From positions 1-64,000 of the IMG/VR virus record IMGVR_UViG_3300021964_009390: a stretch of 64,000 bases of DNA, one strand, 5' to 3'. Below, one piece after another: positions 24,037 to 61,043 of the stretch (its first letter is position 1; each line of letters opens with the position of its first letter). The notes beneath the pieces are model-generated. The model worked only from the letters and a program-made list of their open reading frames with translations, was not told the origin of the DNA and did not search any database. A program made the position numbers and the translations under genes.

Positions 24037-24459
24037 ATGTTCACGTCTGATGCGCATGAAATTGTTCTCGTGTACGAGAGCATGAAAAATGCAAATCGGG
24101 TCAGCAAAGTAGTGATAGTAAACAACAACAAGATACTGTTGCTACAAAAAAACGGCTCTCTCAAATGGGAGTTACCAGGGGGGCATGTGGAGAGTGAAGA
24201 GAAGTTTTCACAAGCAGCTGTCCGTGAAGTCCGAGAGGAAACCGGTTACAAATTGGAATCTGATCGCTTGACCAAATTGCAGACTAGTGTAAATGACAAT
24301 GTCAAACAACGTGTTTACAGGTACACTGAGCTGGTCAAACACAAGCCACGTCTGAGCGATGAACATGTGGATTACGCTTGGGTTTCCCGGGATAAACTAG
24401 ATAAATACAAGCTATCACCATCTACAAACCATTTGGCTATACTGAGCAGTTACAACTAA
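24037..24459 (+). CDS. NUDIX hydrolase
   Basis: Nudix box WELPGGHVESEEKFSQAAVREVREETG. Confidence 0.92.
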   Translation: MFTSDAHEIVLVYESMKNANRVSKVVIVNNNKILLLQKNGSLKWELPGGHVESEEKFSQAAVREVREETGYKLESDRLTKLQTSVNDNVKQRVYRYTELVKHKPRLSDEHVDYAWVSRDKLDKYKLSPSTNHLAILSSYN

Positions 24460-24960
24460 TTGAAACCCCCTAATATAGGTGATATAGTCACCATACGTTT
24501 CGCTGGCATGACACGCATCGGTCCAGTGGTGGAAATTACCGGTACTGGTACTGACAAACGATGGGTGGTCAAAAGCAAAGGTATATTTTATCCATGTTTG
24601 ACTCTTGACACTAGCAAATTAAATTATATAATAGGATATACATAATGATATCGATAATGCCAGAACACGCTCCACCAGGTAGTAATATAGGTAAGCTATC
24701 ATTAGTTGTTGCAGAGGATGAACTGATTCAGTTTGACGCGGAAGATGCGATGGAAACCTTGACTGAATATGCGGACCTGATGATCAAGGACATAATGGAC
24801 CTGGAATTGATGAAATTGATCCCGGGAGAAATCACATTAGATTCACTCAACGTGGCATTAAACTTTATTGTAGTAAACGATTATTATGGTGATGAGGACC
24901 CGCACTGGACAAACACGTATCATAATTTAATACGTATAAAATTTATGTTGAATAAATAGT

Positions 24961-25908
24961 ATGAACGTAGCGTTTTTTGAAAATAAGTTGTCTGAACGAG
25001 GTACAACTACTAGTTTGTTTGATTATGCATACTACAACCAAAAAATATTAGGTAATAAATCGTATGTATTTTATTGTAAACAGCACCACGTGAACAACAA
25101 TGATCAGGTAATTGAAAAATTTAACAAACATTTTACAGTACATGGAGTTGTAGAGTTTGAAGAGGTAGATAGATATCTAACACATTACAATATCAATCAT
25201 ATCTATATAATTAAAGGTGGTGGTATCGATAACCAATTGAGTAGAGTTGCTAAAAATTGCATTCATTGTGTTTTTAACAGTAAACACCCACATGGTGATG
25301 TGTATAGTTCTATAGCTCCTTGGGTAAAAGGTAATAATAATAAATATCCTGTTGTTCCTCATATGATAAATTTACCAAAACATAATTTAAATATGCGTCA
25401 ACAATTAAATATTCCAAAAGAAGCAATTGTGTTTGGTGGTTATGGTGGCCGGGATAGTTTTAGTATTTCATTCGTTCATAATGTTGTATATGATATAGCA
25501 AAAAATAATTCAAATATATAATTTTTATTTGCGAATTTTAATAAATTTTGTAAAAGTTTGCCAAATATTATTCATTTACCTACTATAATAGATTTAAATG
25601 AAAAAGTTAAATTTATAAATAGTTGTGATGCTAATTTATGGGCACAAAAACATGGAGAAGTAATGAGTTTGTCTATGGGTGAATTTAGTATTAATAATAA
25701 ACCAATTATATGTAAAAATATAGGTAATCCCGGTCATGTTCATTTATTAAAAGATAAAGCAATTTGGTATAAAAATAAAAATGATTTAAAAAAGATTTTA
25801 TTAAATTTTAATCCTAAAATAGAAAGTCAAAAAGATTGGAATGCGTATAAAGAATATACCCCAAAAAAAGTAATGAAAATATTTAATGATGTATATTTAA
25901 ACTCATGA
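24961..25908 (+). pseudogene. AT-rich glycosyltransferase interrupted by one in-frame TAA at 25519-25521
   Basis: The two ORFs share a frame: KNNSNI*FLFANFNKFCKSLPNIIHL. The GT-B-like FGGYGG and GExxxLSxGEFS motifs lie on either side of the stop. Confidence 0.75.
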
Positions 25909-25953
25909 AATATCTGTTGCAAAAACAATAAACATAATATATCATATATATAT

Positions 25954-26400
25954 ATGAACATAAAACATACACTATATCTTATCGGTACTCTAGTAGCAAC
26001 TCATACATATGGTAACACTTGCCCGTTGATGCAAGGAGACACCGTCGACCCGGACGAGACCAGTGTTGTCGCTGGACAGACAATAGAGTTTTGTTGCGGG
26101 AGTTGTGTGAAAGCGTTTGATAACAATGTAGCTTACTACATAAAAGCGATCCCATCATTAGGCGAGCTGTTCACTGACGAACAAAAAAAGCAACTCAAGG
26201 TGTGTTGTGTAAAATTGTTACCTCAACGTTTCTGCCCGGTGTACCCGGATCGGATCATCAACCCAAAAAGTCCAAGCGTAGAATACAAAGGTACTAAAAT
26301 ATATTTGTGGAGCAGCTCCGCGGTACGACGGTGGAATCGTGACCCGGATCGATATTACAAGCAAGCTGTAGAAGCCGGCGTGTTACCGGGATCCAAGTGA
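25954..26400 (+). CDS. Secreted YHS-like metal-binding protein
   Basis: Signal-peptide-like N-terminus, CPLM..VDP, IEFCCGSC, and a second repeat FCPVYP..VEYKG.KIY. Confidence 0.6.
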   Translation: MNIKHTLYLIGTLVATHTYGNTCPLMQGDTVDPDETSVVAGQTIEFCCGSCVKAFDNNVAYYIKAIPSLGELFTDEQKKQLKVCCVKLLPQRFCPVYPDRIINPKSPSVEYKGTKIYLWSSSAVRRWNRDPDRYYKQAVEAGVLPGSK

Positions 26401-26747
26401 TCACCCGGTTCACGTTGCTGGTGTTACTTCTCACTGGATGTAACCACAGTAACACGTTGTCCCCTGGAGACACCAATGTATACCGTACAGCTAGCTATGA
26501 TTCTGAAATACAAGCGTTGCTCAGAACAGACGCAGATAACAAACGCTGGTCCCGGACGTATTTACATGAAATAGACACAGCGGTGAGAAACGATGACCAT
26601 GACGCGATTAAATTCTACGTATCCGAATATGAAAAAATACCAATGGATATAGTACCTCATCATTTGAGACATGAACCAGGCTATGTACAACCGGTAACAC
26701 CATTAGAAAAATTCTTTAGAATCACCATATTTTTACCAGCTGAGTAA
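26397..26747 (+). CDS. Putative lipoprotein
   Basis: Lipobox LLTGC. Confidence 0.5.
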   Translation: MITRFTLLVLLLTGCNHSNTLSPGDTNVYRTASYDSEIQALLRTDADNKRWSRTYLHEIDTAVRNDDHDAIKFYVSEYEKIPMDIVPHHLRHEPGYVQPVTPLEKFFRITIFLPAE

Positions 26748-26896: not shown

Positions 26897-27067
26897 TCAC
26901 TTCCGACCACTAGACCTGATGCGTGACGGTTCAATTTGTATTTTGTTATCTACAATTTTAATTTTAAAACCTTCCGGACTGACATTTTTATAATATTGTA
27001 AATAATGCTTCAAACGATTGAATTTAGGCGCTTCATCACCCTCTACATATTGTCTAAACGATTTCAC
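26897..27067 (-). CDS. Small late protein with MKSFRQYVE N-terminus (GTG start)
   Basis: TAAATA lies 5 nt upstream of the GTG at 27067 on the minus strand. Confidence 0.6.
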   Translation of the reverse strand: MKSFRQYVEGDEAPKFNRLKHYLQYYKNVSPEGFKIKIVDNKIQIEPSRIRSSGRK

Positions 27068-27102: not shown

Positions 27103-28803
27103 GTGATAACATTCAAAGAGTATGCAAAAACATTACTGAACGAGGTCAAAGACACGCGTCGTAATCGGGAACAGATGATACAATCATACGGTTTGATGGA
27201 TCATGCACCCGAACATGTAGCTCAAGAACGAGCCAAAGAGTTGATAGACAAATTCACAAAATTAGAACCACTCATAGACCCTAATCATGACTATTTTGGT
27301 CTTCCGGGGAAAAAATACAATCCGAAAGATATATTCAGCTGGGCTAGATTATCCAAGGACATGGGGTATGACAAGCTAGAAGCGTTACAAAATTTTGAAG
27401 CGATGTTGATCGATCTAGGTAGAATGTCAGATCGGAAAGAACAAACAAAACTATCTGAAAAAGAATATGATGTATTAGTTGATAATGAACATGCTACTCT
27501 GTATCGCCCCAAGTCGATGGCCGCTAGCTGTAAACTAGGTGCAGGAACAAAATGGTGCACGGCTGCAACTAATAACAACCAATTTGATAGTTACATAGCA
27601 CGAGGTATTGTGTTGTTTTATGCTATAACCAAGCGGAAGAAGTATAACACAGCACAAGCTGTATGGCCACCACAACCCGCTGGGGCCGGTGGCCGTGCAC
27701 CTGGTAGTGATTTCAAGCCGGAGGAGAAATATGCAGTGGCCATGTACCCTGATGGCGAAACATTTGAATTTTTTGATTCTCAAGATTTTGCTATGGATAA
27801 ATCTGACTGGAAGGATGAATTCGCTGCTTTGGAGCTACCAACAGATTTAAATTTTTACAAGAAACATGGCCCATCACCCATATCCTTGCTCCGACAATCT
27901 GCTATTGACGCGCAATCCAAGTTGAGCGGTCAAGTGGCGCGTAGTGAGTTCGATGAAGAGACTAACTGGGAGTTGTTAAATGATGTGTTAGACAGGGTCA
28001 AGAGAATATTCAAGGACCAGGATCCGGAACAAATAGAACAGTTAAAAAAATATCGCGCGGACGAAGGCATGCCGGATGAAGTGTTTTTGATGGATGTGTT
28101 TGATAGCAACTCAATGGAATATTTCACAGACCAGGAATACAACCCACCTGGCAGCAACAACTGGGGCAACGCGCAATTCCAACAGGAGATAGTAAGAAAC
28201 GTCAAGCGATTGACATACTTGACCAAACAATTGAACGACCGTCAAGGATCCGAGGACGATGGTCGTGAGATGGATGACATAAATCGACTGCTATACGGTC
28301 CTAATGACAGTGAAGAGTCTCAAAACCGCATGCACATGTTGATTGGATATGTCGTCAAACACATGAACGGTTCTTGGCCGGAGCTAGAAAAGGCTCTTAT
28401 CGACATGTGGATGACCAATCATGCTTCTACAGACATGGTGGTCGCAGATGGTTACTCTGAACACTCACAACACCCGTTTCAAGACAGCATGATGTGGTTG
28501 AGACTGGTGATGAAATACAAAGATTACAACTGGCCGGAGCTAGAACAAGCTTTACATACACGTATCAAGCAAGTGTTGCATAAAAAACCAGATGATGAGA
28601 ACCTCACACGAGGATTGATAAGCATGGGTAAGTCATTCAACCTGTTGAGCAACATAGGTATCAAAACAACCGAGATGCTTGCTCATGTACCGGAGACAAA
28701 AAATCATCTGTTGAGGTATGCTGGTGGTGAGTGGGATATTGATGGACCACCTTTGACTGACCGAGCCGAGCGAGAGCTCAGATGGCGAAAAACTGGTAGA
28801 TAA
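27103..28803 (+). CDS. Large putative internal virion protein
   Basis: MITFKEY..LLNE N-terminus, ASCKLGAGTKWCTAA motif, late motif 5 nt upstream. Confidence 0.6.
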   Translation: MITFKEYAKTLLNEVKDTRRNREQMIQSYGLMDHAPEHVAQERAKELIDKFTKLEPLIDPNHDYFGLPGKKYNPKDIFSWARLSKDMGYDKLEALQNFEAMLIDLGRMSDRKEQTKLSEKEYDVLVDNEHATLYRPKSMAASCKLGAGTKWCTAATNNNQFDSYIARGIVLFYAITKRKKYNTAQAVWPPQPAGAGGRAPGSDFKPEEKYAVAMYPDGETFEFFDSQDFAMDKSDWKDEFAALELPTDLNFYKKHGPSPISLLRQSAIDAQSKLSGQVARSEFDEETNWELLNDVLDRVKRIFKDQDPEQIEQLKKYRADEGMPDEVFLMDVFDSNSMEYFTDQEYNPPGSNNWGNAQFQQEIVRNVKRLTYLTKQLNDRQGSEDDGREMDDINRLLYGPNDSEESQNRMHMLIGYVVKHMNGSWPELEKALIDMWMTNHASTDMVVADGYSEHSQHPFQDSMMWLRLVMKYKDYNWPELEQALHTRIKQVLHKKPDDENLTRGLISMGKSFNLLSNIGIKTTEMLAHVPETKNHLLRYAGGEWDIDGPPLTDRAERELRWRKTGR

Positions 28804-29103: not shown

Positions 29104-29160
29104 ATCCCCAATATTTATTCTAGACACTATCATTAGCAACTACTTTCAATAAATATACAT

Positions 29161-29439
29161 ATGTCTATCAAAACTTTCAAACAGTATGTGGAGATGCTCG
29201 CCCGGGACGCGAAAAAAGGAGACAAGATTAAAAACATTAATCCTGACTGTGAACATCATGGGTCTGAAGGTGAAATAGAAGATGTGGTTGACTTACCAGA
29301 AAAAGGATCAAAACAAGTAAAGAGCAAGCACAACATGCCAGGTAAGCTAATCAAATATAAAGTTTCTAATACCGATGGTAAAAATTATGATTCTGGTGAC
29401 ACGTTATACAAGGACCCGAGTCAACTTAAAAAACGCTAG
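29161..29439 (+). CDS. Putative virion protein (IKTFKQYVE N-terminus)
   Basis: N-terminal motif plus TAAATA 5 nt upstream. Confidence 0.6.
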   Translation: MSIKTFKQYVEMLARDAKKGDKIKNINPDCEHHGSEGEIEDVVDLPEKGSKQVKSKHNMPGKLIKYKVSNTDGKNYDSGDTLYKDPSQLKKR

Positions 29440-31681: not shown

Positions 31682-32221
31682 TTATTGTTGAGCAGGCTGT
31701 TGCTGTTGCTGAGCAGGCTGTTGCTGTTGCTGAGCAGGCTGTTGCTGTTGCTGAGCAGGCTGTTGCTGAGCAGGCTGTTGCTGTTGCTGAGCAGGCTGTT
31801 TACCCAACTGCTGTTGAACTTGTTGTATCAGTTGCTCCACTTTGCCGATACGCTGATCTATTGCAGCAATTTTCTGAACGTTAGTGTCAATCTCTTGCTC
31901 TTGTGTTTGGTCTAGTTGATCAGCCGCTTGTTGCGCCTTCTCGATACCTTGTGCTTGTTGAGCATCCACCTCCGCTTCTTGTGAAGCTTGTTGTTCTGCG
32001 TCTTGCGCTTGTTGGTCTACTTGTCCTTGTAAATTGTCAATTTGTGTTCCTGCATCCTTACCTCGAGCGGCATCCACCGTGTCTTGTATTGCGGTGCTGA
32101 TTCCCCCGGTGGCTATATCTAAAGCATGCCCTCCTGCAGTCTTCGCGGCATTTTTCATGTTCTGCCAGTTAACCTCGTTAATTTTAACGTACTGTTTGTA
32201 AATATCATCAACTTTGCTCAT
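31682..32221 (-). CDS. Gln-rich late protein with a PAQQQQQ repeat tail
   Basis: TAAATA 5 nt upstream; coiled-coil-like Q/A-rich body. Confidence 0.75.
   Translation of the reverse strand: MSKVDDIYKQYVKINEVNWQNMKNAAKTAGGHALDIATGGISTAIQDTVDAARGKDAGTQIDNLQGQVDQQAQDAEQQASQEAEVDAQQAQGIEKAQQAADQLDQTQEQEIDTNVQKIAAIDQRIGKVEQLIQQVQQQLGKQPAQQQQQPAQQQPAQQQQQPAQQQQQPAQQQQQPAQQ
31690..31800. repeat. 21-bp tandem repeat GAGCAGGCTGTTGCTGTTGCT (4 full copies, one 15-bp copy, one partial copy)
   Basis: Read directly; encodes QQQQQPA on the minus strand. Confidence 0.95.
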
Positions 32222-45289: not shown

Positions 45290-46057
45290 ATGAGCGATCG
45301 AGACGATAAAAAAATATTTGAATCATACACAGACTCCCCGGCTTCAACTCGACCGGGTTCATACATAAGCCGGTTGATACAATCCGCAAAAGACCGAAAA
45401 TCCCGGGGAAGACAGGAAACAGAAACACATAAAGGTTTCAGTTCGGATGACCAACGCGAGGATGATGAACGTGAGATGGAACGTATCATGGCATTGCAAA
45501 AATTCGGTCATGGAGCAGATTACAACACACCATTTGAAGAGACTGACCACAGCAAGGATGACCCGGCATTAGCTCCTGGTGACAAACGTATGAAGGATGG
45601 GAGCGTGGTAGACAAGGATGGTAAAGTGGTGTACAAACCCAAACCAAAAGTTGCCAAAGAGAAGAAAAAGCCGGATGGTGATAGTGATGGAGTGCCGGAC
45701 TGGGCGGACAAACATCATGGTGAAGATGACCATGCTAAGAAAAGAGTGGCTAAAGAAGGTACCAAGGGTACTCGATCAGATCGCGAAAAAGCTGATGTTA
45801 ATGACGATGAAAAAATAGAACCATGGGAAAAGGCCCGGGCGAACGCCATTCGAAAGTCTCAAGGTAAAACGCATTTATGTGCTAAAACAGTGAATCATGA
45901 AAGTTATGGACCAGGTGCCACAATACATGGTCAACACGCCATACCGGACGTGAACGGAAACATCGAGTGGTACATGGTCGAGTTCAAACATGGAACAGAA
46001 AAGGTACGTACAGAAGATGTTGAAGTCGTTTTTGCTGTTGAACATCACCACAATTAA
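45290..46057 (+). CDS. Putative virion protein with Ca-binding DxDxDG-like motifs
   Basis: PDGDSDGVPDWAD and DVNDDEKIEPWE; C-terminal His-rich domain HLCAK..H..QHAIPD..G..EWY.VEF.HG. Confidence 0.6.
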   Translation: MSDRDDKKIFESYTDSPASTRPGSYISRLIQSAKDRKSRGRQETETHKGFSSDDQREDDEREMERIMALQKFGHGADYNTPFEETDHSKDDPALAPGDKRMKDGSVVDKDGKVVYKPKPKVAKEKKKPDGDSDGVPDWADKHHGEDDHAKKRVAKEGTKGTRSDREKADVNDDEKIEPWEKARANAIRKSQGKTHLCAKTVNHESYGPGATIHGQHAIPDVNGNIEWYMVEFKHGTEKVRTEDVEVVFAVEHHHN

Positions 46058-51907: not shown

Positions 51908-52874
51908 CTAGCAATCTACGTGCTTGTTTCTCTTCATGCTCAATCATAAGATTGATCGCGTAGTCTTTTTGTTTGAGTTCGATGTCCCAGTCAATATGCA
52001 TGTTCTCTGTATAGAAACTCTCGTGTTTGTGTCGCCACAACGCTGGTGAATCAATAGCAAAATCTGTATGGGCTCGTGGGTTACCATTGGCACCACCCTC
52101 ACTGTAATGAAACAATGGATTCACATCATGAGCTTTCCATGTACTAGCACACACTCGGAACGCCTCTTTAGCGCCCCACGTACCTGGGTTACATGCATGA
52201 TGCAAGTTGTCAAATGTGATGGGTATACCAGTCTCTAGATGGATCAGCTCGAACAACATGTCGGGTGTCCATAGACCTTTGTCTTCGTTCTCTAGCACTA
52301 GCCGAGATTTGACTCGATCCGGAAGCTTGTGGTAGTTAGTTATGAATTCAGCAGCTATAGTTTCTGCATCACCGGTACTGCGACTCATGTGTATATTCAA
52401 GGGATACCAGTAAGATCTACTGTGTTCACCTGCCATACGATCCAGCAGCCATGCATGATGGTCCAACTCATTTATGGTGCGTCTCACAACTTCTGGATTG
52501 GCGCTACACAACACATTGAAATGATCCGGATGAAAACTGACACGAAAATCTTTGGGAGACTGTCTGGTCACAAAATGTTGTATCTCTGCAAACTTGTCGT
52601 CAATCAACGTGGCGTTAGGTAGGTCTCGTAAACCAACGTTGGCTTTGTCAAGATTGAACAACGGAAACAGCGTGCTACTGATTCGATAACCCCAGCCGTT
52701 ACTGAGCGCGAACCGCATGGTTTCGAGAGTGGTTGTGAGATTCTCTAGTGCACGTTCTCCTAGGATCTCTAGAGCATCCACACGTTCATGTTTCTCGAAC
52801 TGAGTGAATCTGAACGCGCGATGGTTAAATCCTTGTTTTTTTAACGCTAAACTAATGCAACATAGGTTATACAT
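51894..52874 (-). CDS. uvsE: UV damage endonuclease
   Basis: YRISS.LFP, RVSFHPDHFNVL.S, LNIH, RLVLENED, TFDNLHH, HYSE. Confidence 0.9.
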   Translation of the reverse strand: MYNLCCISLALKKQGFNHRAFRFTQFEKHERVDALEILGERALENLTTTLETMRFALSNGWGYRISSTLFPLFNLDKANVGLRDLPNATLIDDKFAEIQHFVTRQSPKDFRVSFHPDHFNVLCSANPEVVRRTINELDHHAWLLDRMAGEHSRSYWYPLNIHMSRSTGDAETIAAEFITNYHKLPDRVKSRLVLENEDKGLWTPDMLFELIHLETGIPITFDNLHHACNPGTWGAKEAFRVCASTWKAHDVNPLFHYSEGGANGNPRAHTDFAIDSPALWRHKHESFYTENMHIDWDIELKQKDYAINLMIEHEEKQARRLLANHL

Positions 52875-52887
52875 AATAAATAAGTAT

Positions 52888-53418
52888 ATGAGCATAAACC
52901 AAGACACGCAACTAATATGGGAGAATTACAACTATTCATTCGACAAAGATTCCATGATAAATCACGCGGTAAAAATGCACCAGAAACATGGTGCTGGGAT
53001 TGACGAGATAAAAGAAACATTGATGGCTGCGGCGATGTCCGGTGGTCCGGAACAAGCACATCATGTGGCGCAGTATTTAAAAAGTGATGAATTCACTAAC
53101 GAACTTAAAAATCGTTTACAGTCTCTAGATGATGAGATGATGCACGAGGAGCTTGACCGAGGAGACGAAGCTGGTGATTATACTGCGTTTTTGAAGGAGA
53201 TGGCACGAGAGCTGGTGAGAAACGACATGCCGGAGGAGGAAGCAATGGAAATTGTGTTGAGTCATCCATTTGAAGAAACATACGGTGAATATTTGAGAGT
53301 CAGAGGAGCAGCCGGTGTATACACAGCCGCTCAAAAGCACAAAGAACTAGCGGAAAAGTCCGGATATTACCATGAGGTTGACATGAACATGTTACAAAAT
53401 TGGAAGTATGTTAGCTAG
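52888..53418 (+). CDS. Putative virion protein (DTQLIWENY N-terminus)
   Basis: Late motif 5 nt upstream. Confidence 0.6.
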   Translation: MSINQDTQLIWENYNYSFDKDSMINHAVKMHQKHGAGIDEIKETLMAAAMSGGPEQAHHVAQYLKSDEFTNELKNRLQSLDDEMMHEELDRGDEAGDYTAFLKEMARELVRNDMPEEEAMEIVLSHPFEETYGEYLRVRGAAGVYTAAQKHKELAEKSGYYHEVDMNMLQNWKYVS

Positions 53419-54383
53419 TCTATATAATATTTAATTGTACTTTCTAACAGCTCATCAAAATTAGCGCTTGAAGACCAACCAAGTTCAGTCTTCAATTTGT
53501 TACAATCAACCGCGTACCGGTAGTCATGCCCCTTACGATCCGTTACAAATGTAATTTGCTGTTTATATGACATACCATCTTGTTTAGGTCTCAATCTATC
53601 TAGCAACCCACATATTTTGCTCACAAGGTCAATGTTACTCATCTCATGATCACCTCCAATATTATATGTTTCCCCGGTCAAACCTTTACGAAAGACCAGC
53701 TCGATGGCTCGGCAATGGTCTAATACATACAACCAGTCTCGTATGTTTTTACCGTCACCATACACTGGTATATTCCCACCTGTTAACGCGGTTTTCACCA
53801 CTGTAGGTATCAATTTTTCTACATGTTGATGGGGTCCAAAATTGTTACTACAACTGGTGATGACTGTGTCAATTCCATATGTACGTTGATAACTACGCAC
53901 CATCAAACCACCACTCGCTTTGCTGGCGCTGTAAGGGCTGTTAGGCGCAACTGGTGTATCCTCTGTGAACATACCTGTGTCACCTAAAGTACCATATACT
54001 TCATCGGTACTTACATAGTGAAACCTACCGGTACAATATTTCCGGAATGCTTCTAGTAACACTCCTGTACCATTCACATTTGTGGTGACAAATTGCAAAG
54101 GGTCTTCGATAGAGTTATCCACGTGACTCTCAGCCGCTAGATGTATGATAGAATCTATACCGTACTGTTGGATGGTGTATTCAACTTGCTGAGCATTGCA
54201 TATGTCACCTTTGACAAATGTGTATCTACCATTCAATTTGACTGAATCTAAATTGCTCAAGTCTCCTGCGTATGTCAGCTTGTCATAATTAACAAACCAC
54301 ATGTCATTACTATTGTTGATCAAATGCAATATCAAATTACTACCAATAAAACCGCACCCTCCAGTGATTAAAACATGTTTCAT
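53415..54383 (-). CDS. rmlB: dTDP-glucose 4,6-dehydratase
   Basis: ITGGCGFIGSN, DKLTYAG, HLAAESHVD, VSTDEVYG, YSASKAS, YGDG.NIRDWLYV, DRKGHD.RY. Confidence 0.95.
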   Translation of the reverse strand: MKHVLITGGCGFIGSNLILHLINNSNDMWFVNYDKLTYAGDLSNLDSVKLNGRYTFVKGDICNAQQVEYTIQQYGIDSIIHLAAESHVDNSIEDPLQFVTTNVNGTGVLLEAFRKYCTGRFHYVSTDEVYGTLGDTGMFTEDTPVAPNSPYSASKASGGLMVRSYQRTYGIDTVITSCSNNFGPHQHVEKLIPTVVKTALTGGNIPVYGDGKNIRDWLYVLDHCRAIELVFRKGLTGETYNIGGDHEMSNIDLVSKICGLLDRLRPKQDGMSYKQQITFVTDRKGHDYRYAVDCNKLKTELGWSSSANFDELLESTIKYYID

Positions 54384-54396
54384 AATAAATATATGT

Positions 54397-54918
54397 ATGT
54401 TAGAACGATTCGATAATCTATATGAAAAGCACCTTCCGGAGGAAAAAAAGAAAGGTTTAGACGGCAAAGCATGTTGGAAAGGATATCGACAACAGGGCAC
54501 CAAAAAGAAGGGTAACAAAACTGTCGACAACTGCGTGAAGGTCGGTGAGGGTTTATGGGCCAATATAAACAAGAAAAATAAGTCCGGTCGTAAATCAGCC
54601 AGCAAAGGAAGCAAAGCCTACAAAGCCGCTGTCAAAGCCGGAGACAAGCTAGAAGCCACCAAGGAAAGTATTGCTGCTGAGAAAAATGCACAATGCACTG
54701 GACCTACTAAAAAAGCCAGTAGCACCAGCAAAGGTAAAAAATGGATGAAATGTGTGAAAAGTGACAGCGGTGGTTACAAACGTATACACTGGGGTCAAAA
54801 AGGAGTCAAAGTGAGCGGCAAAGCAAACACCAAAAGACGTAAAAGCTTCAGAGCTCGTCACAAATGTAGCACGGCCAAAAGCAACACACCACGCGGACAA
54901 GCATGCAAGGACTGGTAG
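54397..54918 (+). CDS. Basic modular putative virion protein
   Basis: CWKGY..GTKKKG..VDNCV and GLWANIN modules; Lys-rich. Confidence 0.65.
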   Translation: MLERFDNLYEKHLPEEKKKGLDGKACWKGYRQQGTKKKGNKTVDNCVKVGEGLWANINKKNKSGRKSASKGSKAYKAAVKAGDKLEATKESIAAEKNAQCTGPTKKASSTSKGKKWMKCVKSDSGGYKRIHWGQKGVKVSGKANTKRRKSFRARHKCSTAKSNTPRGQACKDW

Positions 54919-55538: not shown

Positions 55539-55948
55539 AACAAGAACATCAAGACGAATCAATACGCCCATGGGGTCATTACGAGATCCTGTTGGATGAA
55601 GAGTATTGCAAAGTGAAACGTATATATGTGAAGCCCGGTCAACGTCTGAGTTATCAGTATCATCACAAGAGGCAGGAAGCATGGACCGTGGTGAGCGGAG
55701 TCGCTAGAATCACCTTGAACGGTAACACAAGCGATTATGAACCAGGTCAAACTGTGTTGATACCACTAGGTGCTAAACATCGCATGGCCAACCCAGCAGA
55801 AGATCAGGACATGATACTGATCGAGGTGCAAACGGGTACATATTTTGGTGAGGATGACATAGTGAGAGTAGAAGATGACTACGATCGTCCGAAGAAACAT
55901 GTCAATGTGTGGAAACCTAAATGGGAATGGACAGATGAGGACCTTTAA
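55529..55948 (+). CDS. Mannose-6-phosphate isomerase type II-like cupin
   Basis: RPWGHY, VKRIYVKPGQRLSYQYHHKRQEAW, IEVQTG.YFGEDDIVR. Confidence 0.88.
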   Translation: MAIEQEHQDESIRPWGHYEILLDEEYCKVKRIYVKPGQRLSYQYHHKRQEAWTVVSGVARITLNGNTSDYEPGQTVLIPLGAKHRMANPAEDQDMILIEVQTGTYFGEDDIVRVEDDYDRPKKHVNVWKPKWEWTDEDL

Positions 55949-56381
55949 AAAATTTCATGAAAACCGAGAGGGTTGCCCAAAAGCAACACAGGACCTAGAA
56001 CTGAACACCAAGAACAGGAACGCCACAAGAGAAAACCACATGTACGGTCCGTTGAACCCGGCCATGCCCAGCAAAGATTACTGGCAAAAGATCGCTGACA
56101 AATGGGGCTCTAGTGTGGAAGAGGCCATGAACAGTCGATGTGCCAATTGTGTAGCGTTTGACAAATCCCCTCGTATGAAAGATTGCTTACCGATGTCTGA
56201 CGAGAAGATGCATTGGTCATATCACGACATGCCGGGGTTCGATCAAGACCCAGAGTTTGGCTATTGCTGGATGCATCACTTCAAATGTTTCAACGGCCGG
56301 ACTTGTGACACCTGGGCCACCGGCGGGCCTATAACAGATGATGAAACATCTAAAAAGTGGCAAGAAAAAAACCAGTCATGA
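55935..56381 (+). CDS. Putative virion protein (MRTFKKFHE N-terminus), Cys-rich
   Basis: CPKATQD, YGPLNP, CANCVAFD. Confidence 0.6.
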   Translation: MRTFKKFHENREGCPKATQDLELNTKNRNATRENHMYGPLNPAMPSKDYWQKIADKWGSSVEEAMNSRCANCVAFDKSPRMKDCLPMSDEKMHWSYHDMPGFDQDPEFGYCWMHHFKCFNGRTCDTWATGGPITDDETSKKWQEKNQS

Positions 56382-57604
56382 AAACGTTCAAACAATTTTT
56401 TTACGAAAACAGAGAGTATCAAGTAGATGACTTTCAGCAAGAAGAATATCTAGAGTATCAGAGCGAGTTTGTATATGATTATGAAGCCATGATGGGCTTA
56501 CCACATGATAAACTAGCCAGTATCATAACCAAAGCCGGTAACAAACGTTTCTCTGCAACCATTGATGGTGTGGATCCATCTGTTGATGGTACTGAGCATT
56601 ATTATGTCGTTACTGATCGTGACGTGTTGAAAAATATAGCGTCATTGATTGCTAGTACAGGTGAGCCACATCATGAGGAATTCGCCATGGGTGTTGGTAC
56701 TGGTGATAGTTTTGAATTCATGGTACGTTTACCCAAATCCGGTTTCACCGGTGAAGAGATTGGTGACATGCAAGTGTTTCTTGTAACACCAGGAGGTTCT
56801 GATCAGCTACATGCACTACTATCTCAAGTGAGAGAAGGTTTATGGACCAACATCAACGCCAAGAAAAAACGCGGAGGCAAGAGTGCCAAGAAAGGCAGCA
56901 AAGCTTACAAAGCAGCCAAGAAAGCTGGTGACAAGCTAGAAGCCACAAAAGAAAGTGTATGGAAACCGGGAGATTTAGGTGTTCAGAATTGGGGTGAGTA
57001 TGAAGCAGGTGGTCGGCATGCTGAACTAGGAGCCATCGAACCTCATATGGAGAAAATCCCAGGTCCGGATCGTGTGGTAGCGCACATGAACGGATTGCAG
57101 AATGAATACATGAGAGTGTTAAAAACCCGGAAATCCAACCCAGATGTGAAGGACAACTACAAGTATGTCCGCAACAATATAGATCAAGCCATACAGATGA
57201 TGAATCAGACGACAGGTGGAGAAACCGAATCAAGAAGAAGCATCATACAAGACATCCACATTGCAGGATTTGCAGCACGTAGATACATACGAGCAATTGA
57301 ATCAGGTGAAACTAATCAAGCTTATTACAAGAGATTGTTGAATCATCTGCGTGACGCGGCTGATGCCATGGAGGGATTGATCGAACAAGAGGTTGAAGGA
57401 GAACTTGGTGGATGGAATGTCAATGAAAATTTCAAGGACGGCAAGAAAAAAGGCAAGAGCCGTCCGGGTCGAGTCAAAAGAGCCGGGGCCAGTTGCAACG
57501 GCAGCGTCACAAGTTTACGTAAAAAGGCCAAAGCCGGTGGTGAGAAGGGCAAGATGTACCACTGGTGCGCCAACATGAAGAGTGGGAGGAAGAAGAAAAA
57601 ATAA
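56378..57604 (+). CDS. Modular putative virion polyprotein (MKTFKQFFYE N-terminus)
   Basis: Acidic domains alternate with basic modules EGLWTNIN... and ENFKDGKKKG... Confidence 0.65.
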   Translation: MKTFKQFFYENREYQVDDFQQEEYLEYQSEFVYDYEAMMGLPHDKLASIITKAGNKRFSATIDGVDPSVDGTEHYYVVTDRDVLKNIASLIASTGEPHHEEFAMGVGTGDSFEFMVRLPKSGFTGEEIGDMQVFLVTPGGSDQLHALLSQVREGLWTNINAKKKRGGKSAKKGSKAYKAAKKAGDKLEATKESVWKPGDLGVQNWGEYEAGGRHAELGAIEPHMEKIPGPDRVVAHMNGLQNEYMRVLKTRKSNPDVKDNYKYVRNNIDQAIQMMNQTTGGETESRRSIIQDIHIAGFAARRYIRAIESGETNQAYYKRLLNHLRDAADAMEGLIEQEVEGELGGWNVNENFKDGKKKGKSRPGRVKRAGASCNGSVTSLRKKAKAGGEKGKMYHWCANMKSGRKKKK

Positions 57605-57667: not shown

Positions 57668-58390
57668 ATGAGATCAAAAAAACATATTTTAGTTTTAGGT
57701 GACTCACATGCAAATAAGTTTTTTAGCTCTACCAAACTAGCAACCGGGGCCCAGAAACAACCGGATAGAATAATAAACGCTTTACAACCTGACTTTAGAT
57801 TCGATACCGTGGTCTGCCCGGGCGCGACTGCTCAGGGTGCAGTAAATCCTACATCCAAAACAAAAGCACTTGAAACATTTAAAAAGAAATTGAGTAAAAT
57901 AAATCCAGACGATTATGATTACATTGCAATTATGTTGGGTGAAGTAGATTGTGGTTTCGTAATTTGGTATCGTGCGGAAAAATACTCGATATCGGTTGAG
58001 GAACAATTGAATTTGTCGGTAAACAATCTGTTTGAATTTATTCGGAATGAAGTGCTTTTAAAGTTTAAACCAAAACAAGTTATCGTTATGGGAAGTGTTT
58101 TGCCTACCATAAAAGACGATCAAGATTGGGGTGAAGTTTGTCATCTTAGAAGTTCCGTAAAAGCAACTCAACTCGAAAGAACAAATTTGACACTAAGATA
58201 CAATTGTATATTGAAAGAAGAGTCGTGTAAACTAGGTTATAATTATATTGATATTACAGATGAGACAATCGATAAACATACAGGTTTAATTGGTGACAAA
58301 TACATAAATAGTAACGAATTTGACCACCACCTGCCTTTCAAAAAAACATGGAAGTTTTTTTATACCAAATTAATTAAATTAACAAAATGA
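57668..58390 (+). CDS. SGNH/GDSL-like hydrolase or acyltransferase
   Basis: LVLGDSH, G.TAQG, GEVDC, DHH. Confidence 0.65.
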   Translation: MRSKKHILVLGDSHANKFFSSTKLATGAQKQPDRIINALQPDFRFDTVVCPGATAQGAVNPTSKTKALETFKKKLSKINPDDYDYIAIMLGEVDCGFVIWYRAEKYSISVEEQLNLSVNNLFEFIRNEVLLKFKPKQVIVMGSVLPTIKDDQDWGEVCHLRSSVKATQLERTNLTLRYNCILKEESCKLGYNYIDITDETIDKHTGLIGDKYINSNEFDHHLPFKKTWKFFYTKLIKLTK

Positions 58391-58496
58391 AAACATTTAA
58401 ACAATATTAGATATGAAATACAAATTTACAAAAAATTGGTTCGATGACTCAGCAATAAAAAAAATAACATATAAGTTGCGGATTAGTCAAAATACC

Positions 58497-58504: not shown

Positions 58505-58512
58505 TATAGTAT

Positions 58513-59781
58513 ATGAATGATTTAAGCCGCCGCGAATTTGTAAGTACAGTTGCCAAAAGCTGTTTAGGAGTGAGCGCCATACTGAGCGCTCAAGATTTAT
58601 TAGCAATCAAACCCACCGGGCAGATACCAACCGCTCGGAATGTTATATTTTTATACATGGCAGGAGGCATGACTCACATCGACACGTTCGACCCAAAACC
58701 GGAGAACAGTGACGTGATGGGTGAAACAACTGCCATTGACACTACAGCGGACGGGGTACAGATAGGCAACTGGTTACCCAACACCGCCAAACAGATGCAC
58801 AACGCAAGTTTGATACGTACATTGTCGTCCAATCAAGGTGCACATGCACAAGCCAACTATTTGTTACACACCAGCTACCAACGCCGCGGCACGATCGTGC
58901 ATCCAACCATGGGTGCATGGGTGAGCAAACAGACACCCAAACTGAATCGATCGTTACCATCTAACGTGAGAATCAACGGAGGTAGCGACATATTAGGTTC
59001 CGGTTATTTGGAGAAAAAACACGGACCGTTACCATTGGGTAACCCCAACGCAGGTATACAAAATGTGTCACAGGCCAAGTATCTGGACGAGACCATGTAC
59101 AACAAACGGATGGACATATCCAGCAAATTCAACAAAAATTTCTTAGACATGTTCCCACAAAAGCAAGTACGTGCATACACTGATTTATATGATGATGCCA
59201 TCCGGTTGATGAAAAGCACAGATCTTGAAGCGTTCGATCTGACAAAAGAAGACCAAGCCACTCGAGACATGTACGGTACCAACAGTTTTGGTCAGGGCTG
59301 CCTATTAGCTAGACGGTTGGTTGAGACTGGTGTACGTTATGTCGAGGTGCAGCTAGGTGGTTGGGACATGCACAACGATGTGTTTGGTAACATGGAGACA
59401 CGAGGTGCTACATTGGACAATGGATTGGCTTCGTTGTTACAAGATTTGAACCGTCGTGGTCTGTTGAGCTCCACACTAGTTGTTGTGGCGAGTGAATTTG
59501 GTCGTACACCAGAGGTCAAAGCAGGCCGCGTGGGACGTGACCATCACCCATCTGCATTCAGCGCCATGTTGGCCGGAGGAGGAGTCAAAGGAGGTTACGT
59601 ACATGGCAAGAGCGACAAGCGTGGTCACTATGTAGAAGAGAAAGGTGTGAAAATGGAAGATCTGAACGCCACGATTGCTTACATGATGGGAATGGACATC
59701 ACTGAAACAATCTATTCTCCAAGTGGCAGACCATTTAAAATTGCTAATGCGGGTGAGGTTGTAACTGACATTTTAGCATAA
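58513..59781 (+). CDS. DUF1501 protein with twin-arginine (Tat) signal
   Basis: LSRREFV, VIFLYMAGGMTHIDTFDPKP, FGQGCLLARRLVETGV..VEV..GGWD.H, SEFGRTP, GRDHHP, GGGVKGG..G.SD. Confidence 0.93.
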   Translation: MNDLSRREFVSTVAKSCLGVSAILSAQDLLAIKPTGQIPTARNVIFLYMAGGMTHIDTFDPKPENSDVMGETTAIDTTADGVQIGNWLPNTAKQMHNASLIRTLSSNQGAHAQANYLLHTSYQRRGTIVHPTMGAWVSKQTPKLNRSLPSNVRINGGSDILGSGYLEKKHGPLPLGNPNAGIQNVSQAKYLDETMYNKRMDISSKFNKNFLDMFPQKQVRAYTDLYDDAIRLMKSTDLEAFDLTKEDQATRDMYGTNSFGQGCLLARRLVETGVRYVEVQLGGWDMHNDVFGNMETRGATLDNGLASLLQDLNRRGLLSSTLVVVASEFGRTPEVKAGRVGRDHHPSAFSAMLAGGGVKGGYVHGKSDKRGHYVEEKGVKMEDLNATIAYMMGMDITETIYSPSGRPFKIANAGEVVTDILA

Positions 59782-59789
59782 ATAATGAC

Positions 59790-60215
59790 ATGCACGACAA
59801 AGACCACCACCTGATATGGGAATCATATTTTGATGAGACTGTAGCCACACCTAAAAACATTGAACGTGTGAGGTCCACATTGAACGATCCGGACCTGCAA
59901 GAACATGAACGACAGCTCATAATAGACACGTTACGCGAGCTAGAGAGACTAGCCACAACACAAGACATCAAAACTGTCAAGCAGAGCATCATGGACAAGC
60001 TGGGCAAGATGCTAGGACGTGAGCGAGTCAATGAACAGGGTAACTATGCCCGGATTGTGGCGGATGAAGAAAAGTTTTTAGAAATAGCGTACAAGTATTA
60101 CGGAGACATGGAAGAAGCCGAGCTGAAATTCCACCACTATGTACTGGAGGAGTTGCTAGAGATGGACGAGCTGACACGTCGCGAGTATCAAGGCCAAGGA
60201 CCACAGCGAGACTAA
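59790..60215 (+). CDS. Putative virion protein (DHHLIWESY N-terminus)
   Basis: Late motif 5 nt upstream. Confidence 0.6.
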   Translation: MHDKDHHLIWESYFDETVATPKNIERVRSTLNDPDLQEHERQLIIDTLRELERLATTQDIKTVKQSIMDKLGKMLGRERVNEQGNYARIVADEEKFLEIAYKYYGDMEEAELKFHHYVLEELLEMDELTRREYQGQGPQRD

Positions 60216-60216
60216 C

Positions 60217-60519
60217 ATGCATAACGGTACAGACATACGGAGCATATATGATATCTACTCCGGTAACAGCTCGTTGATTACCGAGTCTAAAGAGCAACCA
60301 GGTGAGATACCTGAGCTAGGTATTCGAGTGATACGTAACGAACATGGTGATAATGATGGTGACAGATATTATGAAACGTGGGAAGTATATCCCATAGATA
60401 ACACATCTGGTACTGGAGCACCATTGGATTGGGACTACGCCGGAGGGACTGAAACCATTGACGAGGTGGTAGCCAGAGTCAAAATGAATTTCAAAACAAG
60501 AGGAACACCAACATTATGA
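60217..60519 (+). CDS. Putative virion protein
   Basis: DIRSIYDIY..LITE N-terminus; in an operon with its neighbours. Confidence 0.5.
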   Translation: MHNGTDIRSIYDIYSGNSSLITESKEQPGEIPELGIRVIRNEHGDNDGDRYYETWEVYPIDNTSGTGAPLDWDYAGGTETIDEVVARVKMNFKTRGTPTL

Positions 60520-61043
60520 AAGATAAAGATCAACAATTAATATGGGAATCATACATTCGAGAGAATGAATATGGACCCAGTGGAGCACCTAGTATCAATG
60601 TATCAGATTGGAAATTAGAATCATGGTACAAACAAGACGATTGGGATGACAATCCAAACCCATGGGACCGGTATGTTGATGACGTGCTAGGTGACATATA
60701 TCAAGATATCCAAGAATATGGAGTAGAGTCTGACCGAGTGTATGTCGCGTTTTTCGGTCCACCTCGAGGAACTGCTGATTACGAGCAATGGACCGACCCG
60801 GGTATTGTGGTGGCTTTTGGAAACAATTCAGAAGAATACGGAGGAGACACGTTCAATTCGAAAGGTATATTTGTTGATAATGATGGAGAAGGTGAGAGTT
60901 TTGTATTACCATCACAACAACTAGAAGAATTGCTCAAAGTTAACAACCGAGCAATAGACGATGAAGTCACTAGTGACGAAGACTACAAGACTTGGGACCC
61001 ATACGGTCCAGAAGGTGTCGTGAGTAGAAGCGATTTTTACTGA
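60516..61043 (+). CDS. Acidic putative virion protein (DQQLIWESY N-terminus)
   Basis: Shares its N-terminal motif with the gene at 59790. Confidence 0.6.
   Translation: MKDKDQQLIWESYIRENEYGPSGAPSINVSDWKLESWYKQDDWDDNPNPWDRYVDDVLGDIYQDIQEYGVESDRVYVAFFGPPRGTADYEQWTDPGIVVAFGNNSEEYGGDTFNSKGIFVDNDGEGESFVLPSQQLEELLKVNNRAIDDEVTSDEDYKTWDPYGPEGVVSRSDFY

What the first reader, a model, noticed from the sequence alone, without database searches (positions are those of the whole stretch)
24037..61043. Family of putative capsid-targeting N-termini, in two classes, on at least 12 scattered genes
Seen, class 1 (K.F..Y/F.E): 27067 MKSFRQYVE, 27103 MITFKEY..LLNE, 29161 IKTFKQYVE, 55935 MRTFKKFHE, 56378 MKTFKQFFYE. 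Seen, class 2 (D..LI(W/F/Y)E.Y): 45290 DDKKIFESY, 52888 DTQLIWENY, 59790 DHHLIWESY, 60516 DQQLIWESY, with looser variants at 24037 (the NUDIX), 32221 and 60217. The protein bodies are unrelated. Known: T4 internal proteins carry an MKTYQEFIAE-type capsid-targeting sequence removed by gp21 after Glu. Inference: this is a modular address tag that loads diverse cargo, possibly including the NUDIX enzyme, for injection into the host. Class 2 may be a second targeting code.
Basis: partly seen in the sequence, partly recalled or inferred. Interest (0 to 1): 0.72.

Follow-up and report, generated by a model that had tools for sequence, protein, structure and literature searches.

The report
Capsid-targeting tags on phage cargo genes
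A distant relative of phage T4 puts two kinds of short conserved N-terminal tag on about 18 otherwise unrelated late proteins; one kind matches T4's known capsid-targeting sequence, so these are most likely proteins loaded into the phage head, trimmed by the head protease and delivered into the host with the DNA.

Summary
The window is the first 64 kb of a 222-kb T4-like phage genome. It carries a T4-type head module: S77 prohead protease, gp22-like scaffold and gp23-like capsid protein.

Class 1 (M-K-[ST]-F-[KR]-Q-[YF]-[VF]..E) matches the real T4 internal-protein tags (MKTYQEFIAE, MKTFKEF). This includes the aromatic residues at positions 4 and 7 that T4 mutagenesis showed to drive targeting. 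The same motif marks exactly the non-structural proteins found in the published virion proteome of cyanophage S-CREM2.

Class 2 ([DN]-[KR]-D-x-x-L-I-W-E-[SA]-[YF]) is a separate, highly conserved N-terminal block. It ends in an I-x-Glu protease-type site and is followed by variable spacers and unrelated, mostly acidic bodies. It recurs in related uncultured phages, but no phage with a virion proteome carries it.

Both motifs are essentially confined to ORF starts, vary at synonymous sites, and mostly sit behind late-promoter-like boxes.

The NUDIX gene, 32221 and 60217 are not supported as members. No virion data exist for this phage.

Verdict: class 1 is a T4-type capsid-targeting sequence family, here expanded. 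Class 2 is probably a second propeptide or address class. This is a new variant of a known kind.

The parts
2317..2988 (+). Prohead protease, gp21-like (Peptidase_S77). It is the presumed enzyme that removes the tags. Its own N-terminus reads MAFKLLVE.
   Evidence: Pfam PF03420, E 2e-31. Holds 9 [LI]xE sites against 3.5 expected.
3165..4091 (+). Head scaffolding protein, gp22-like (T4_CASP). It is the presumed docking platform for the tags.
   Evidence: Pfam PF25623. Holds 19 [LI]xE sites against about 6 expected from composition.
4150..5706 (+). Major capsid protein, gp23-like. The predicted maturation cut is after Glu61 (CLNE|A, nt 4330-4332).
   Evidence: Pfam PF07068, E 5e-88. The alignment to T4 gp23 places CLNE|A on the T4 FLTE|A site.
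26897..27067 (-). Class-1 tagged gene, 56 aa, GTG start. Tag MKSFRQYVE|G (nt 27041-27067). The mature part is basic (pI about 10).
   Evidence: (PSSM 20.0). Late-promoter-like box ATAAATA ends 6 nt before the start.
27103..28803 (+). Class-1 tagged gene, 566 aa, GTG start. Tag MITFKEYAKTLLNE|V (nt 27103-27144). LLNE resembles the capsid protein site CLNE. The body has unknown function.
   Evidence: The PSSM score is weak. Late box is upstream.
29161..29439 (+). Class-1 tagged gene, 92 aa. Tag MSIKTFKQYVE|M, with the motif offset by 2 residues.
   Evidence: score 16.2 at offset 2. Late box is upstream.
55935..56381 (+). Class-1 tagged gene, 148 aa if it starts at 55935. Tag MRTFKKFHE|N. The start is inferred, because the ORF opens at 55875.
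   Evidence: score 13.8. It has no late box of its own.
56378..57604 (+). Class-1 tagged gene, 408 aa. Tag MKTFKQFFYE|N. The body is modular and basic, with a LWxNIxAKKKRGG motif and a 60-aa basic C-terminal domain that is widespread in viral contigs.
   Evidence: top score 27.6.
58387..58410 (+). Relic of a class-1 tag: MKTFKQY followed by a stop, about 100 nt upstream of the DUF1501 gene (58513-59781). In relative L007 the DUF1501 orthologue carries an in-frame class-1 tag.
45290..46057 (+). Class-2 tagged gene, 255 aa. Tag MSDRDDKKIFE|SY. The body is charged and disordered-looking. Its conserved C-terminal domain is shared with proteins that carry other N-termini in other phages.
   Evidence: score 14.2. 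Late box is upstream.
52888..53418 (+). Class-2 tagged gene, 176 aa. Tag MSINQDTQLIWE|NY. In its family the tag is invariant, the spacer varies from 5 to 130 aa, and the C-terminal domain is conserved.
   Evidence: alignment A4. Late box is upstream.
59790..60215 (+). Class-2 tagged gene, 141 aa, acidic. Tag MHDKDHHLIWE|SY.
   Evidence: score 31.6. Late box is upstream.
60516..61043 (+). Class-2 tagged gene, 175 aa, acidic (pI 4.1). Tag MKDKDQQLIWE|SY.
   Evidence: score 37.1.
60217..60519 (+). Doubtful. The N-terminus (DIRSIYDIY; orthologue DIRAIWSAY) looks like a decayed class-2 block that has lost the Glu.
   Evidence: Not detected by the PSSMs.
31682..32221 (-). Doubtful. MSKVDDIYKQYVKINE|V has a YKQYV core and an INE site and is partly conserved in an orthologue, but it scores at background.
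24037..24459 (+). NUDIX hydrolase. Its 24-residue N-terminal extension (..LVYESM..) only loosely resembles class 2 and is not supported as a member.
   Evidence: Pfam NUDIX covers residues 25-126. The orthologue reads ..ILYEGM... PSSMs give background scores.

Best explanation
The tags are N-terminal capsid-targeting propeptides of the T4 kind.

Proposed mechanism:
1. Late in infection the tagged proteins are made together with the head proteins.
2. The first 9-14 residues dock the protein onto the assembling scaffolding core, built from the gp22-like scaffold at 3165-4091.
3. The capsid shell (gp23-like protein, 4150-5706) closes around the core.
4. The S77 prohead protease (2317-2988) cuts after the Glu that ends the tag, as it cuts the capsid protein at CLNE|A and shreds the scaffold.
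5. The mature cargo stays inside the head with the DNA and is expected to enter the host at infection.

Class 1 is the direct counterpart of the T4 internal-protein tag: aromatic at positions 4 and 7, hydrophobic at 8, Glu at 9-14. Class 2 is a second propeptide type that keeps the Leu-Ile-x-Glu|small processing half but has a different, acidic N-terminal half. It sits mainly on small acidic proteins.

Shown here: the motifs, their restriction to N-termini, their conservation, the head module, and the link between this motif type and virion proteins in cyanophages.

Inferred: docking, cleavage, packaging and ejection in this phage.

The overall confidence of 0.7 combines about 0.8 for class 1 and about 0.55 for class 2.
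For: Motif position and statistics:
- The motifs occur almost only at ORF starts.
- PSSMs trained on other phages recover them.
- Synonymous codon variation shows protein-level selection.
- The bodies are unrelated.

Match to T4:
- T4's own record reads ipII/ipIII MKTYQEFIAE|A and ipI MKTFKEF....
- T4 mutagenesis places targeting at residues 4 and 7 and processing at residues 8 and 10 (PMC9026906).
- T4 internal proteins share only the capsid-targeting sequence (PMC3012670).

Head module in this phage:
- S77 protease, T4-type scaffold and Gp23 are in the window.
- The capsid protein site CLNE|A aligns to T4 FLTE|A.
- The scaffold is enriched in [LI]xE, 19 sites against 6 expected.

External proteome test:
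- In cyanophage S-CREM2 a whole-genome pattern for M-K-x-[FL]-x-x-F-[LIM]-x-E hits exactly three gene starts: gp6, gp13 and gp154.
- GTG-initiated gp14 also fits the motif.
- All four are in the published virion proteome, where 52 of 221 proteins were detected. Three of them (gp6, gp14, gp154) are all three of the proteome table's 'regulatory' virion proteins; gp13 is listed there as hypothetical.
- The S-CRM01 kinase g130 starts MISFDQFLSE. The S-CREM2 paper reports serine/threonine kinases in S-CRM01 virions.

The tag follows the phage lineage, not the body:
- DUF6267 has MFTFKEYVLHVE|S in this clade.
- It has other extensions ending [LIF]xE|[AS] in other marine phages.
- It has no extension in cyanophages.
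- In the structure model of DUF6267, residues 1-16 are a low-confidence appendage.

Class 2:
- It is invariant in the 171101 family, whose members share 36-45% overall identity.
- It is invariant in the 52888 family despite spacers of 5-130 aa.
- It is present at ORF starts in relatives and in 9 of 12 IMG/VR loci, including an LIAE|A variant.
- Conservation falls to baseline two residues after the Glu.

Promoters: late-promoter-like TAAATA boxes precede 11 of 18 tagged genes, against 61 of 305 genes overall.
Against: - There is no virion proteome or N-terminal mapping for this phage or any close relative.
- Across orthologue pairs the first 14 residues are not consistently more conserved than the bodies.
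- In several class-1 tags the residue three before the Glu is aromatic (YVE, FHE, FYE) rather than the Leu/Ile of the T4 consensus, so the exact cut site is uncertain.
- 153640 has no Glu in range.
- 27103 scores weakly with the PSSM.
- One high-scoring class-1 match is internal to a glycosyltransferase, at 30875-.
- Class 2 is absent from T4 and from the three cyanophages checked. No phage with a virion proteome is known to carry it.
- The protease-peptide complex prediction gave no answer.
- The regexes and the logo sets were partly chosen by eye.
Confidence: 0.7

Rival explanations
1. Class 1 is a capsid tag, but class 2 is something else. It could be a conserved N-terminal docking motif for another partner, such as a different virion compartment, a phage chaperone like the ClpB-like ATPase next to the capsid gene, or a host factor. 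On this view it is not removed by the head protease.
For: - Class 2 lacks the aromatic residues at positions 4 and 7 that drive T4 targeting.
- The two residues after the Glu ([SA]-[YF]) are also fairly conserved.
- The decayed copy at 60217 and its orthologue keep I-[YW]..Y but lose the Glu. This suggests the Trp/Tyr face matters more than the cut site.
- No known packaged protein carries class 2.
- The cargo differs in character from class 1, being mostly acidic.
Against: - The L-I-x-E|small core equals the processing half of the T4 tag, and an LIAE|A variant exists.
- Class-2 genes have late-type promoters and sit next to class-1 genes in the window and in L117.
- The bodies are unrelated and are separated from the tag by variable spacers.
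Confidence: 0.2
2. The shared N-termini are an mRNA-level or translation-initiation feature of leaderless late transcripts, for example favourable A/T-rich early codons, and not a protein signal.
For: - Late-promoter-like boxes sit exactly 5 nt before ATG in 35 cases, and few genes have a Shine-Dalgarno core. Early codons could therefore matter for initiation.
- Lys, Asn and Ser are enriched at residue 2 genome-wide.
Against: - Codons for the conserved residues vary synonymously, while Phe, Tyr, Trp and Glu are kept.
- Most leaderless-type late genes lack the motifs.
- The same protein motif occurs in T4 and in cyanophages that have ordinary leaders.
- The motif tolerates offsets of 1-2 residues from the Met.
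Confidence: 0.03
3. The genes are diverged paralogues, or carry a duplicated 5' cassette (promoter plus first codons) spread by recombination. The N-terminus persists by descent without any targeting role.
For: - The promoter and tag travel together.
- A tag relic lies upstream of the DUF1501 gene.
- Domain shuffling is evident in the 56378 family.
- T4-type genomes are known to shuffle promoter-bounded cassettes (PMC2839356 and PMC4122927, listed).
Against: - Key residues stay invariant in families at about 40% overall identity. That requires selection on the peptide.
- Cassette spread explains how tags move, not why they are kept.
- The proteome link in S-CREM2 gives the motif a function.
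Confidence: 0.07

Closest known systems
Capsid-targeting sequence (CTS) of T4 internal proteins IPI, IPII and IPIII (Mullaney and Black 1996, as reviewed in PMC9026906 and PMC3012670)
   Same: - About 10 residues at the extreme N-terminus.
- Near-identical pattern: T4 MKTYQEFIAE and MKTFKEF against window MKTFKQFFYE, MITFKEY and MKSFRQYVE.
- Aromatic at positions 4 and 7, hydrophobic at 8, then a Glu.
- Found on unrelated proteins, with a gp21-type protease, gp22-type scaffold and gp23-type shell in the same genome.
   Different: - The host phage is very distant: its capsid protein is about 33% identical to any GenBank phage.
- About 11 class-1 genes against 3 in T4.
- The cargo includes large proteins and enzymes, among them an RNA-ligase-like DUF6267 and a cytidylyltransferase-like protein.
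- The Glu is often at position 9 or 12-14, and the residue three before it is often aromatic.
- Nothing has been tested experimentally.
N-terminal propeptides of T4 Alt, gp24, gp67/68 and of phiKZ/SPN3US head proteins, cut after Glu by gp21-family proteases (PMC5694885)
   Same: Class 2 ends in Leu-Ile-x-Glu followed by Ser/Ala/Asn. This is a protease-type site like ITE-6 of Alt or the A/S-x-E sites of giant phages. The conserved block stops near the cut.
   Different: The class-2 sequence ([DN]-[KR]-D-x-x-L-I-W-E) has no described counterpart. It is shared by at least 7 unrelated proteins in one genome, whereas most known propeptides are specific to one protein.
Virion-associated 'regulatory' enzymes of T4-like cyanophages: S-CREM2 SAM hydrolase, kinase and cytidylyltransferase; S-CRM01 kinase (PMC10665884)
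   Same: These proteins begin MK-x-F-x-x-F-L-x-E, the same motif type as class 1. They were found in purified virions. A cytidylyltransferase-like protein in this genome (153640-) also carries a class-1-like start.
   Different: Different phage lineage and a different consensus. The authors do not mention a targeting sequence, and cleavage was not mapped.

Membership tests
T4-type capsid-targeting sequence (CTS) | Located at the extreme N-terminus, within the first 10-14 residues of the precursor | tested here: met
   Class 1 and class 2 occur almost only at ORF starts.
T4-type capsid-targeting sequence (CTS) | Targeting determinants: aromatic or hydrophobic residues at positions 4 and 7 (T4 Tyr4, Phe7) | tested here: met
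   Class 1 has Phe4 in 27 of 29 collected tags and Phe/Tyr7 in 24 of 29. The T4 determinants come from PMC9026906. Class 2 does not meet this feature.
T4-type capsid-targeting sequence (CTS) | Processing determinants: hydrophobic residue at 8 and Glu at 10, i.e. an (L/I)-x-E cut site | tested here: inconclusive
   Class 2 has L-I-W-E followed by a small residue in all members. Class 1 always has a Glu at 9-14 except in 153640, but the residue three before it is often Tyr/Phe.
T4-type capsid-targeting sequence (CTS) | The genome encodes a gp21-type protease, a gp22-type scaffold and a gp23 with a conserved maturation site | tested here: met
   Pfam S77, T4_CASP and Gp23. CLNE|A aligns to the T4 cut site.
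T4-type capsid-targeting sequence (CTS) | The same tag on proteins with unrelated mature parts | tested here: met
   No pairwise similarity between the bodies. Tags differ by phage lineage on homologous bodies.
T4-type capsid-targeting sequence (CTS) | Late expression together with the head proteins | tested here: inconclusive
   TAAATA boxes lie within 14 nt upstream of 11 of 18 tagged genes, against 20% of all genes. Transcription was not measured.
T4-type capsid-targeting sequence (CTS) | The protein is physically packaged in the head, and the tag is removed by the prohead protease | not testable with these tools
   Indirect evidence only: motif-bearing proteins of S-CREM2 and S-CRM01 are in virion proteomes. 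The complex prediction gave no answer.
T4-type capsid-targeting sequence (CTS) | The tag alone is sufficient to package a foreign protein | not testable with these tools
   Needs a fusion experiment.

The most novel reading that the evidence does not exclude
Short N-terminal 'zip codes' may be a general, lineage-specific packaging system across marine and estuarine T4-like phages, with at least two independent codes in this clade. Class 1 would serve mixed or basic proteins and enzymes. Class 2 would serve a set of small acidic proteins that could be injected anti-defence factors. If so, the injected effector repertoire of uncultured phages could be read directly from sequence.
Probability: 0.4. 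Interest if true: 0.75.

Novelty: new variant of a known kind. Interest (0 to 1): 0.6.

Why it matters
Proteins that a phage carries in its head reach the host before any phage gene is expressed. In T4 these include anti-restriction and host-takeover factors.

A sequence rule that identifies such cargo would let one list candidate first-strike effectors in uncultured phages. Here that list is about 18 proteins, including an RNA-ligase-like enzyme and a cytidylyltransferase-like enzyme.

The same rule would explain why enzymes turn up in cyanophage virion proteomes. It would also supply new packaging tags for phage engineering.

A second tag class would raise the question of whether head cargo is sorted to different sites or packed in different amounts.

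Tried and rejected
- Megablast of the window against GenBank phages: no match.
- Relatives of 27103 and 60516 in IMG/VR: none. The metagenome scan then found relatives of 60516.
- Whole-record searches of the ENA contigs behind L092 and L095: not possible.
- tblastn with the 21-residue class-2 tag against GenBank phages: no match.
- DNA pattern for class 2 in T4, S-CREM2, Syn33, S-CAM9 and S-CRM01: only three scattered matches, none followed up.
- Exhaustive HMMER search with the 149622 protein, looking for homologues with a swapped tag: only its own cluster.
- Complex prediction of the protease with the class-2 peptide: 'no answer'. This is not evidence either way.
- Nucleotide alignment of the tag relic at 58387 with L007 and L099: uninformative.
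- The expectation that tags are always more conserved than bodies was not borne out.
- Global enrichment of Phe at residue 4 over all genes is not significant, because the family is only a few percent of the genes.
- I considered signal peptides or lipoprotein signals and rejected them. The tags are charged and too short.
- Pfam and PHROG gave no function for the window's tagged bodies.


Full report
**What the window is.** The window is bases 1-64000 of a single 222,461-bp contig with 39% G+C. It encodes a T4-type head module:
- a Peptidase_S77 prohead protease (2317-2988);
- a T4-type scaffolding protein (3165-4091);
- a Gp23 major capsid protein (4150-5706).

The capsid protein is only about 33% identical to its best GenBank matches, which are cyanophages. 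There is no nucleotide match to any GenBank phage. The phage is therefore a distant, uncultured-type member of the T4 superfamily.

Aligned with T4 gp23, the T4 maturation site FLTE|A corresponds to CLNE|A here, with the Glu at residue 61. The scaffold carries 19 [LI]-x-E motifs where about 6 are expected. This is what a protein shredded by an (L/I)-x-E-specific protease should look like.

**Check of the observation.** All nine core sites exist as described, with these clarifications:
- 27067 is on the minus strand and starts with GTG.
- 27103 starts with GTG.
- 55935 is an ATG inside an ORF that opens at 55875.
- 56378 overlaps the preceding stop codon.

A six-frame scan of the whole genome finds the class-1 core 7 times. 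Five are the window gene starts and one is an 8-codon relic (MKTFKQY, then a stop) at 58387. The class-2 core is found 4 times, all at gene starts.

Among about 300 predicted proteins, the first 20 residues contain 5 class-1 and 7 class-2 matches. Shuffled N-termini give about 0.01 of each. The roughly 64,000 internal residues give 1 and 0.

Because those expressions were derived from the data, I built position matrices only from tags of other phages and scored all 6,595 candidate starts of the genome.
- For class 1, the window genes 56378, 27067 and 55935 rank 1st, 4th and 9th. 29161 scores 16.2 once its two-residue offset is allowed.
- For class 2, the top seven are exactly 60516, 59790, 52888, 171101-, 149622-, 45290 and 101373. 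A clear gap follows.

Codons differ at synonymous positions between copies. The mature parts show no pairwise similarity.

The three 'looser variants' (NUDIX 24037, 32221-, 60217) score at background. 27103 is weak by matrix, although its TFKEY core equals that of T4 IPI.

**Class 1 compared with T4.** I read the T4 genes from the T4 record instead of relying on memory. ipII and ipIII begin MKTYQEFIAE|A, and ipI begins MKTFKEF.... The window has MKTFKQFFYE, MRTFKKFHE, MKSFRQYVE, MITFKEY.. and ..KTFKQYVE.

A review of the T4 work states three things (PMC9026906):
- The first 10 residues of IPIII suffice for packaging.
- Residues 4 and 7 carry the targeting information, and residues 8 and 10 the processing information.
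- Asp at position 10 blocks cleavage but not targeting.

T4 internal proteins are otherwise unrelated proteins that share only this sequence (PMC3012670). All T4 internal head proteins join the core through it and are cut after Glu (PMC5694885).

In 29 class-1-type tags collected from this genome, its relatives, T4 and cyanophages:
- position 4 is Phe in 27;
- position 7 is Phe or Tyr in 24;
- position 8 is aliphatic or aromatic;
- Glu dominates positions 9-10.

**An external, experimentally anchored test.** DUF6267 and 'cytidyltransferase' genes of T4-like cyanophages led me to the S-CREM2 paper (PMC10665884). It reports a virion proteome of 52 proteins and notes that kinases and cytidyltransferases are repeatedly found in cyanophage virions.

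- A DNA pattern for M-K-x-[FL]-x-x-F-[LIM]-x-E, scanned over the whole S-CREM2 genome, hits exactly three places. These are the starts of gp6 (SAM hydrolase), gp13 and gp154 (cytidylyltransferase).
- The kinase gp14, which starts with GTG, reads KRFDAFLTE.
- All four proteins are in the virion proteome. gp6, gp14 and gp154 are all three of that table's 'regulatory' virion proteins; gp13 is listed there as hypothetical. With 52 of 221 proteins detected, four out of four by chance is about 0.003.
- In S-CRM01 the kinase g130 begins MISFDQFLSE. The S-CREM2 paper reports serine/threonine kinases in S-CRM01 virions.
- The S-CREM2 paper does not mention a targeting sequence. My literature searches found no paper making this link.

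**The tag follows the phage lineage, not the body.** The class-1 gene at 155283- is a DUF6267 protein. Its thousands of homologues all start the conserved domain at K-N-T-H-L-E-H. What lies in front depends on lineage:
- MFTFKEYVLHVE|S in this clade;
- other extensions ending [LIF]-x-E|[AS] in other marine phages;
- no extension at all in cyanophages Syn33, S-CAM9 and S-CRM01.

In a confident structure model (mean pLDDT 85) residues 1-16 are a low-confidence appendage.

The basic C-terminal domain of the 56378 protein occurs in hundreds of viral contigs, on proteins whose N-termini follow yet another pattern, M-[KR]-x-x-[ED]-[LIVF].

In relatives the 56378 tag is joined to different downstream modules. 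The DUF1501 gene, which has only a tag relic upstream in the window, carries an in-frame class-1 tag in L007. Orthologues in the 212-kb and 174-kb relatives keep Phe4, the hydrophobic 7/8 pair and the Glu. Overall identity of the first 14 residues, however, is not consistently higher than that of the bodies.

**Class 2.** The consensus is [DN]-[KR]-D-x-x-L-I-W-E-[SA]-[YF].
- It is invariant in the 171101 family, whose members are 36-45% identical overall.
- It is invariant in the 52888 family, where it is followed by an indel-rich spacer of about 5 to 130 residues and then a conserved C-terminal domain.
- Related metagenome contigs keep it on the orthologues of 52888, 59790 and 60516, on a 59790/60516 fusion, and on a gene with no homologue here.
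- A DNA pattern for M-x-D-x-D-x-x-L-I-W-E finds it at ORF starts in 9 of 12 IMG/VR loci. The bodies range from 78 to 329 residues. Some sit beside class-1 genes or behind ATAAATA boxes. One variant reads LIAE|A, the same four residues as in T4.
- Information content falls to baseline two residues after the Glu.
- The core Leu-Ile-x-Glu followed by a small residue equals the processing half of the T4 tag. The targeting half is different.
- Class-2 cargo is mostly acidic: 16 of 22 have pI below 5.5, against 35% of all genes. Class-1 cargo is mixed or basic. The 22 are not independent, since some are orthologues.
- Class 2 is absent from T4 and from the cyanophages checked. No proteome test is therefore possible, and it remains the weaker half of the interpretation.

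**Expression context.** A TAAATA box lies within 14 nt of the start of 11 of 18 tagged genes, against 61 of 305 genes overall. The others follow such genes in what look like operons. This fits late co-expression with the head proteins, but it is inferred from sequence only.

**Conclusion.**
- Class 1 is, with high probability, the T4 capsid-targeting sequence in a far relative. It is expanded to about 11 genes, 5 of them plus a relic in the window.
- Class 2 is probably a second propeptide or address class, with 7 genes, 4 of them in the window.
- Packaging, cleavage and ejection in this phage remain unproven.
- The NUDIX enzyme is not supported as cargo.

Noticed in passing
whole genome; in the window e.g. 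1525-1536, 29147-29160, 45276-45289, 52874-52887: Late-promoter-like TAAATA boxes sit at a fixed 5 nt from the ATG: 35 of 307 boxes, against 4-13 at the other offsets examined. Only 26 of 305 ORFs have a Shine-Dalgarno-like core. TATATA/TATAAT boxes also abut many starts. Most mRNAs of this T4-like phage may be leaderless or nearly so, including two GTG-initiated genes (27067-, 27103+).
   Followed up: partly
window 58513-59781, 49004-51052, 23854-24033: The window carries DUF1501 (with a twin-arginine-like signal), DUF1549/DUF1553 (PSCyt2/PSD1) and an Hc1 histone-like protein. From my own knowledge these families are typical of Planctomycetes and the wider PVC group, which hints at the host. 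The Hc1-like gene has a late-type promoter and lies directly upstream of the NUDIX gene.
   Followed up: no
window 58387-58410; L007 1111-2445: An 8-codon relic of a class-1 tag lies upstream of the DUF1501 gene. In relative L007 the orthologue reads tag, then LLE, then a twin-arginine signal. Protease cleavage there would expose an export signal at the new N-terminus.
   Followed up: partly
G000 154015-155283 (-) = L003 10015-11283: DUF6267 looks like an ATP-dependent RNA ligase. It has an invariant K-W-D-G motif. All 50 listed structural matches are polynucleotide ligases: Naegleria RNA ligase Z 9.2, T4 Rnl2 7.3, T4 Rnl1 7.2. It lies close to a cytidylyltransferase-like gene (153059-153640), with one small gene between them, and is sometimes fused to one (P0038, P0042).
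   Followed up: partly
window 5766-8228 (-): A ClpB/ClpA-like double AAA+ protein with a Clp_N domain is encoded right next to the capsid gene on the opposite strand. A similar gene is present in the unrelated tagged-gene locus L055.
   Followed up: no
window 14893-19690 (+): Three consecutive large ORFs of 688, 374 and 536 aa. From their N-terminal sequences I judged them PrkA/YeaH/SpoVR-like. This rests on memory and was not run against Pfam.
   Followed up: no
window 56378-57604 and loci L008-L086: The last 60 residues of the 56378 protein (very basic, with ..SRPGRVKR..KMYHWC.NMK..) are 82-93% identical to the C-termini of proteins in most of the 80 IMG/VR loci kept from 570 tblastn matches. 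Those proteins have very different bodies. This domain may be a DNA-binding module of internal head proteins.
   Followed up: partly
window 53419-54900: No convincing ORF on either strand between the 52888 gene and 54903. There are only a TTG-initiated 399-aa low-complexity ORF on the minus strand and a 205-aa ORF that overlaps it. G+C here is higher, at 43%.
   Followed up: no
window 129-782, 1077-1532: A Thr/Ala-repeat ORF lies at the start of the contig. A TnsA-like endonuclease gene sits where T4 has genes 67/68, just upstream of two small membrane-protein genes and the protease gene.
   Followed up: no
OR473000 (S-CREM2) gp6, gp13, gp14, gp154; HQ615693 (S-CRM01) g129-g131: Cyanophage virion-associated enzymes share an MK-x-F-x-x-F-L-x-E start that the original paper does not mention. 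gp12 of S-CREM2 (a Cas9-like virion protein) has a similar RFASFMAE|A stretch at residues 18-26, which may mean its start codon is annotated too far upstream.
   Followed up: partly
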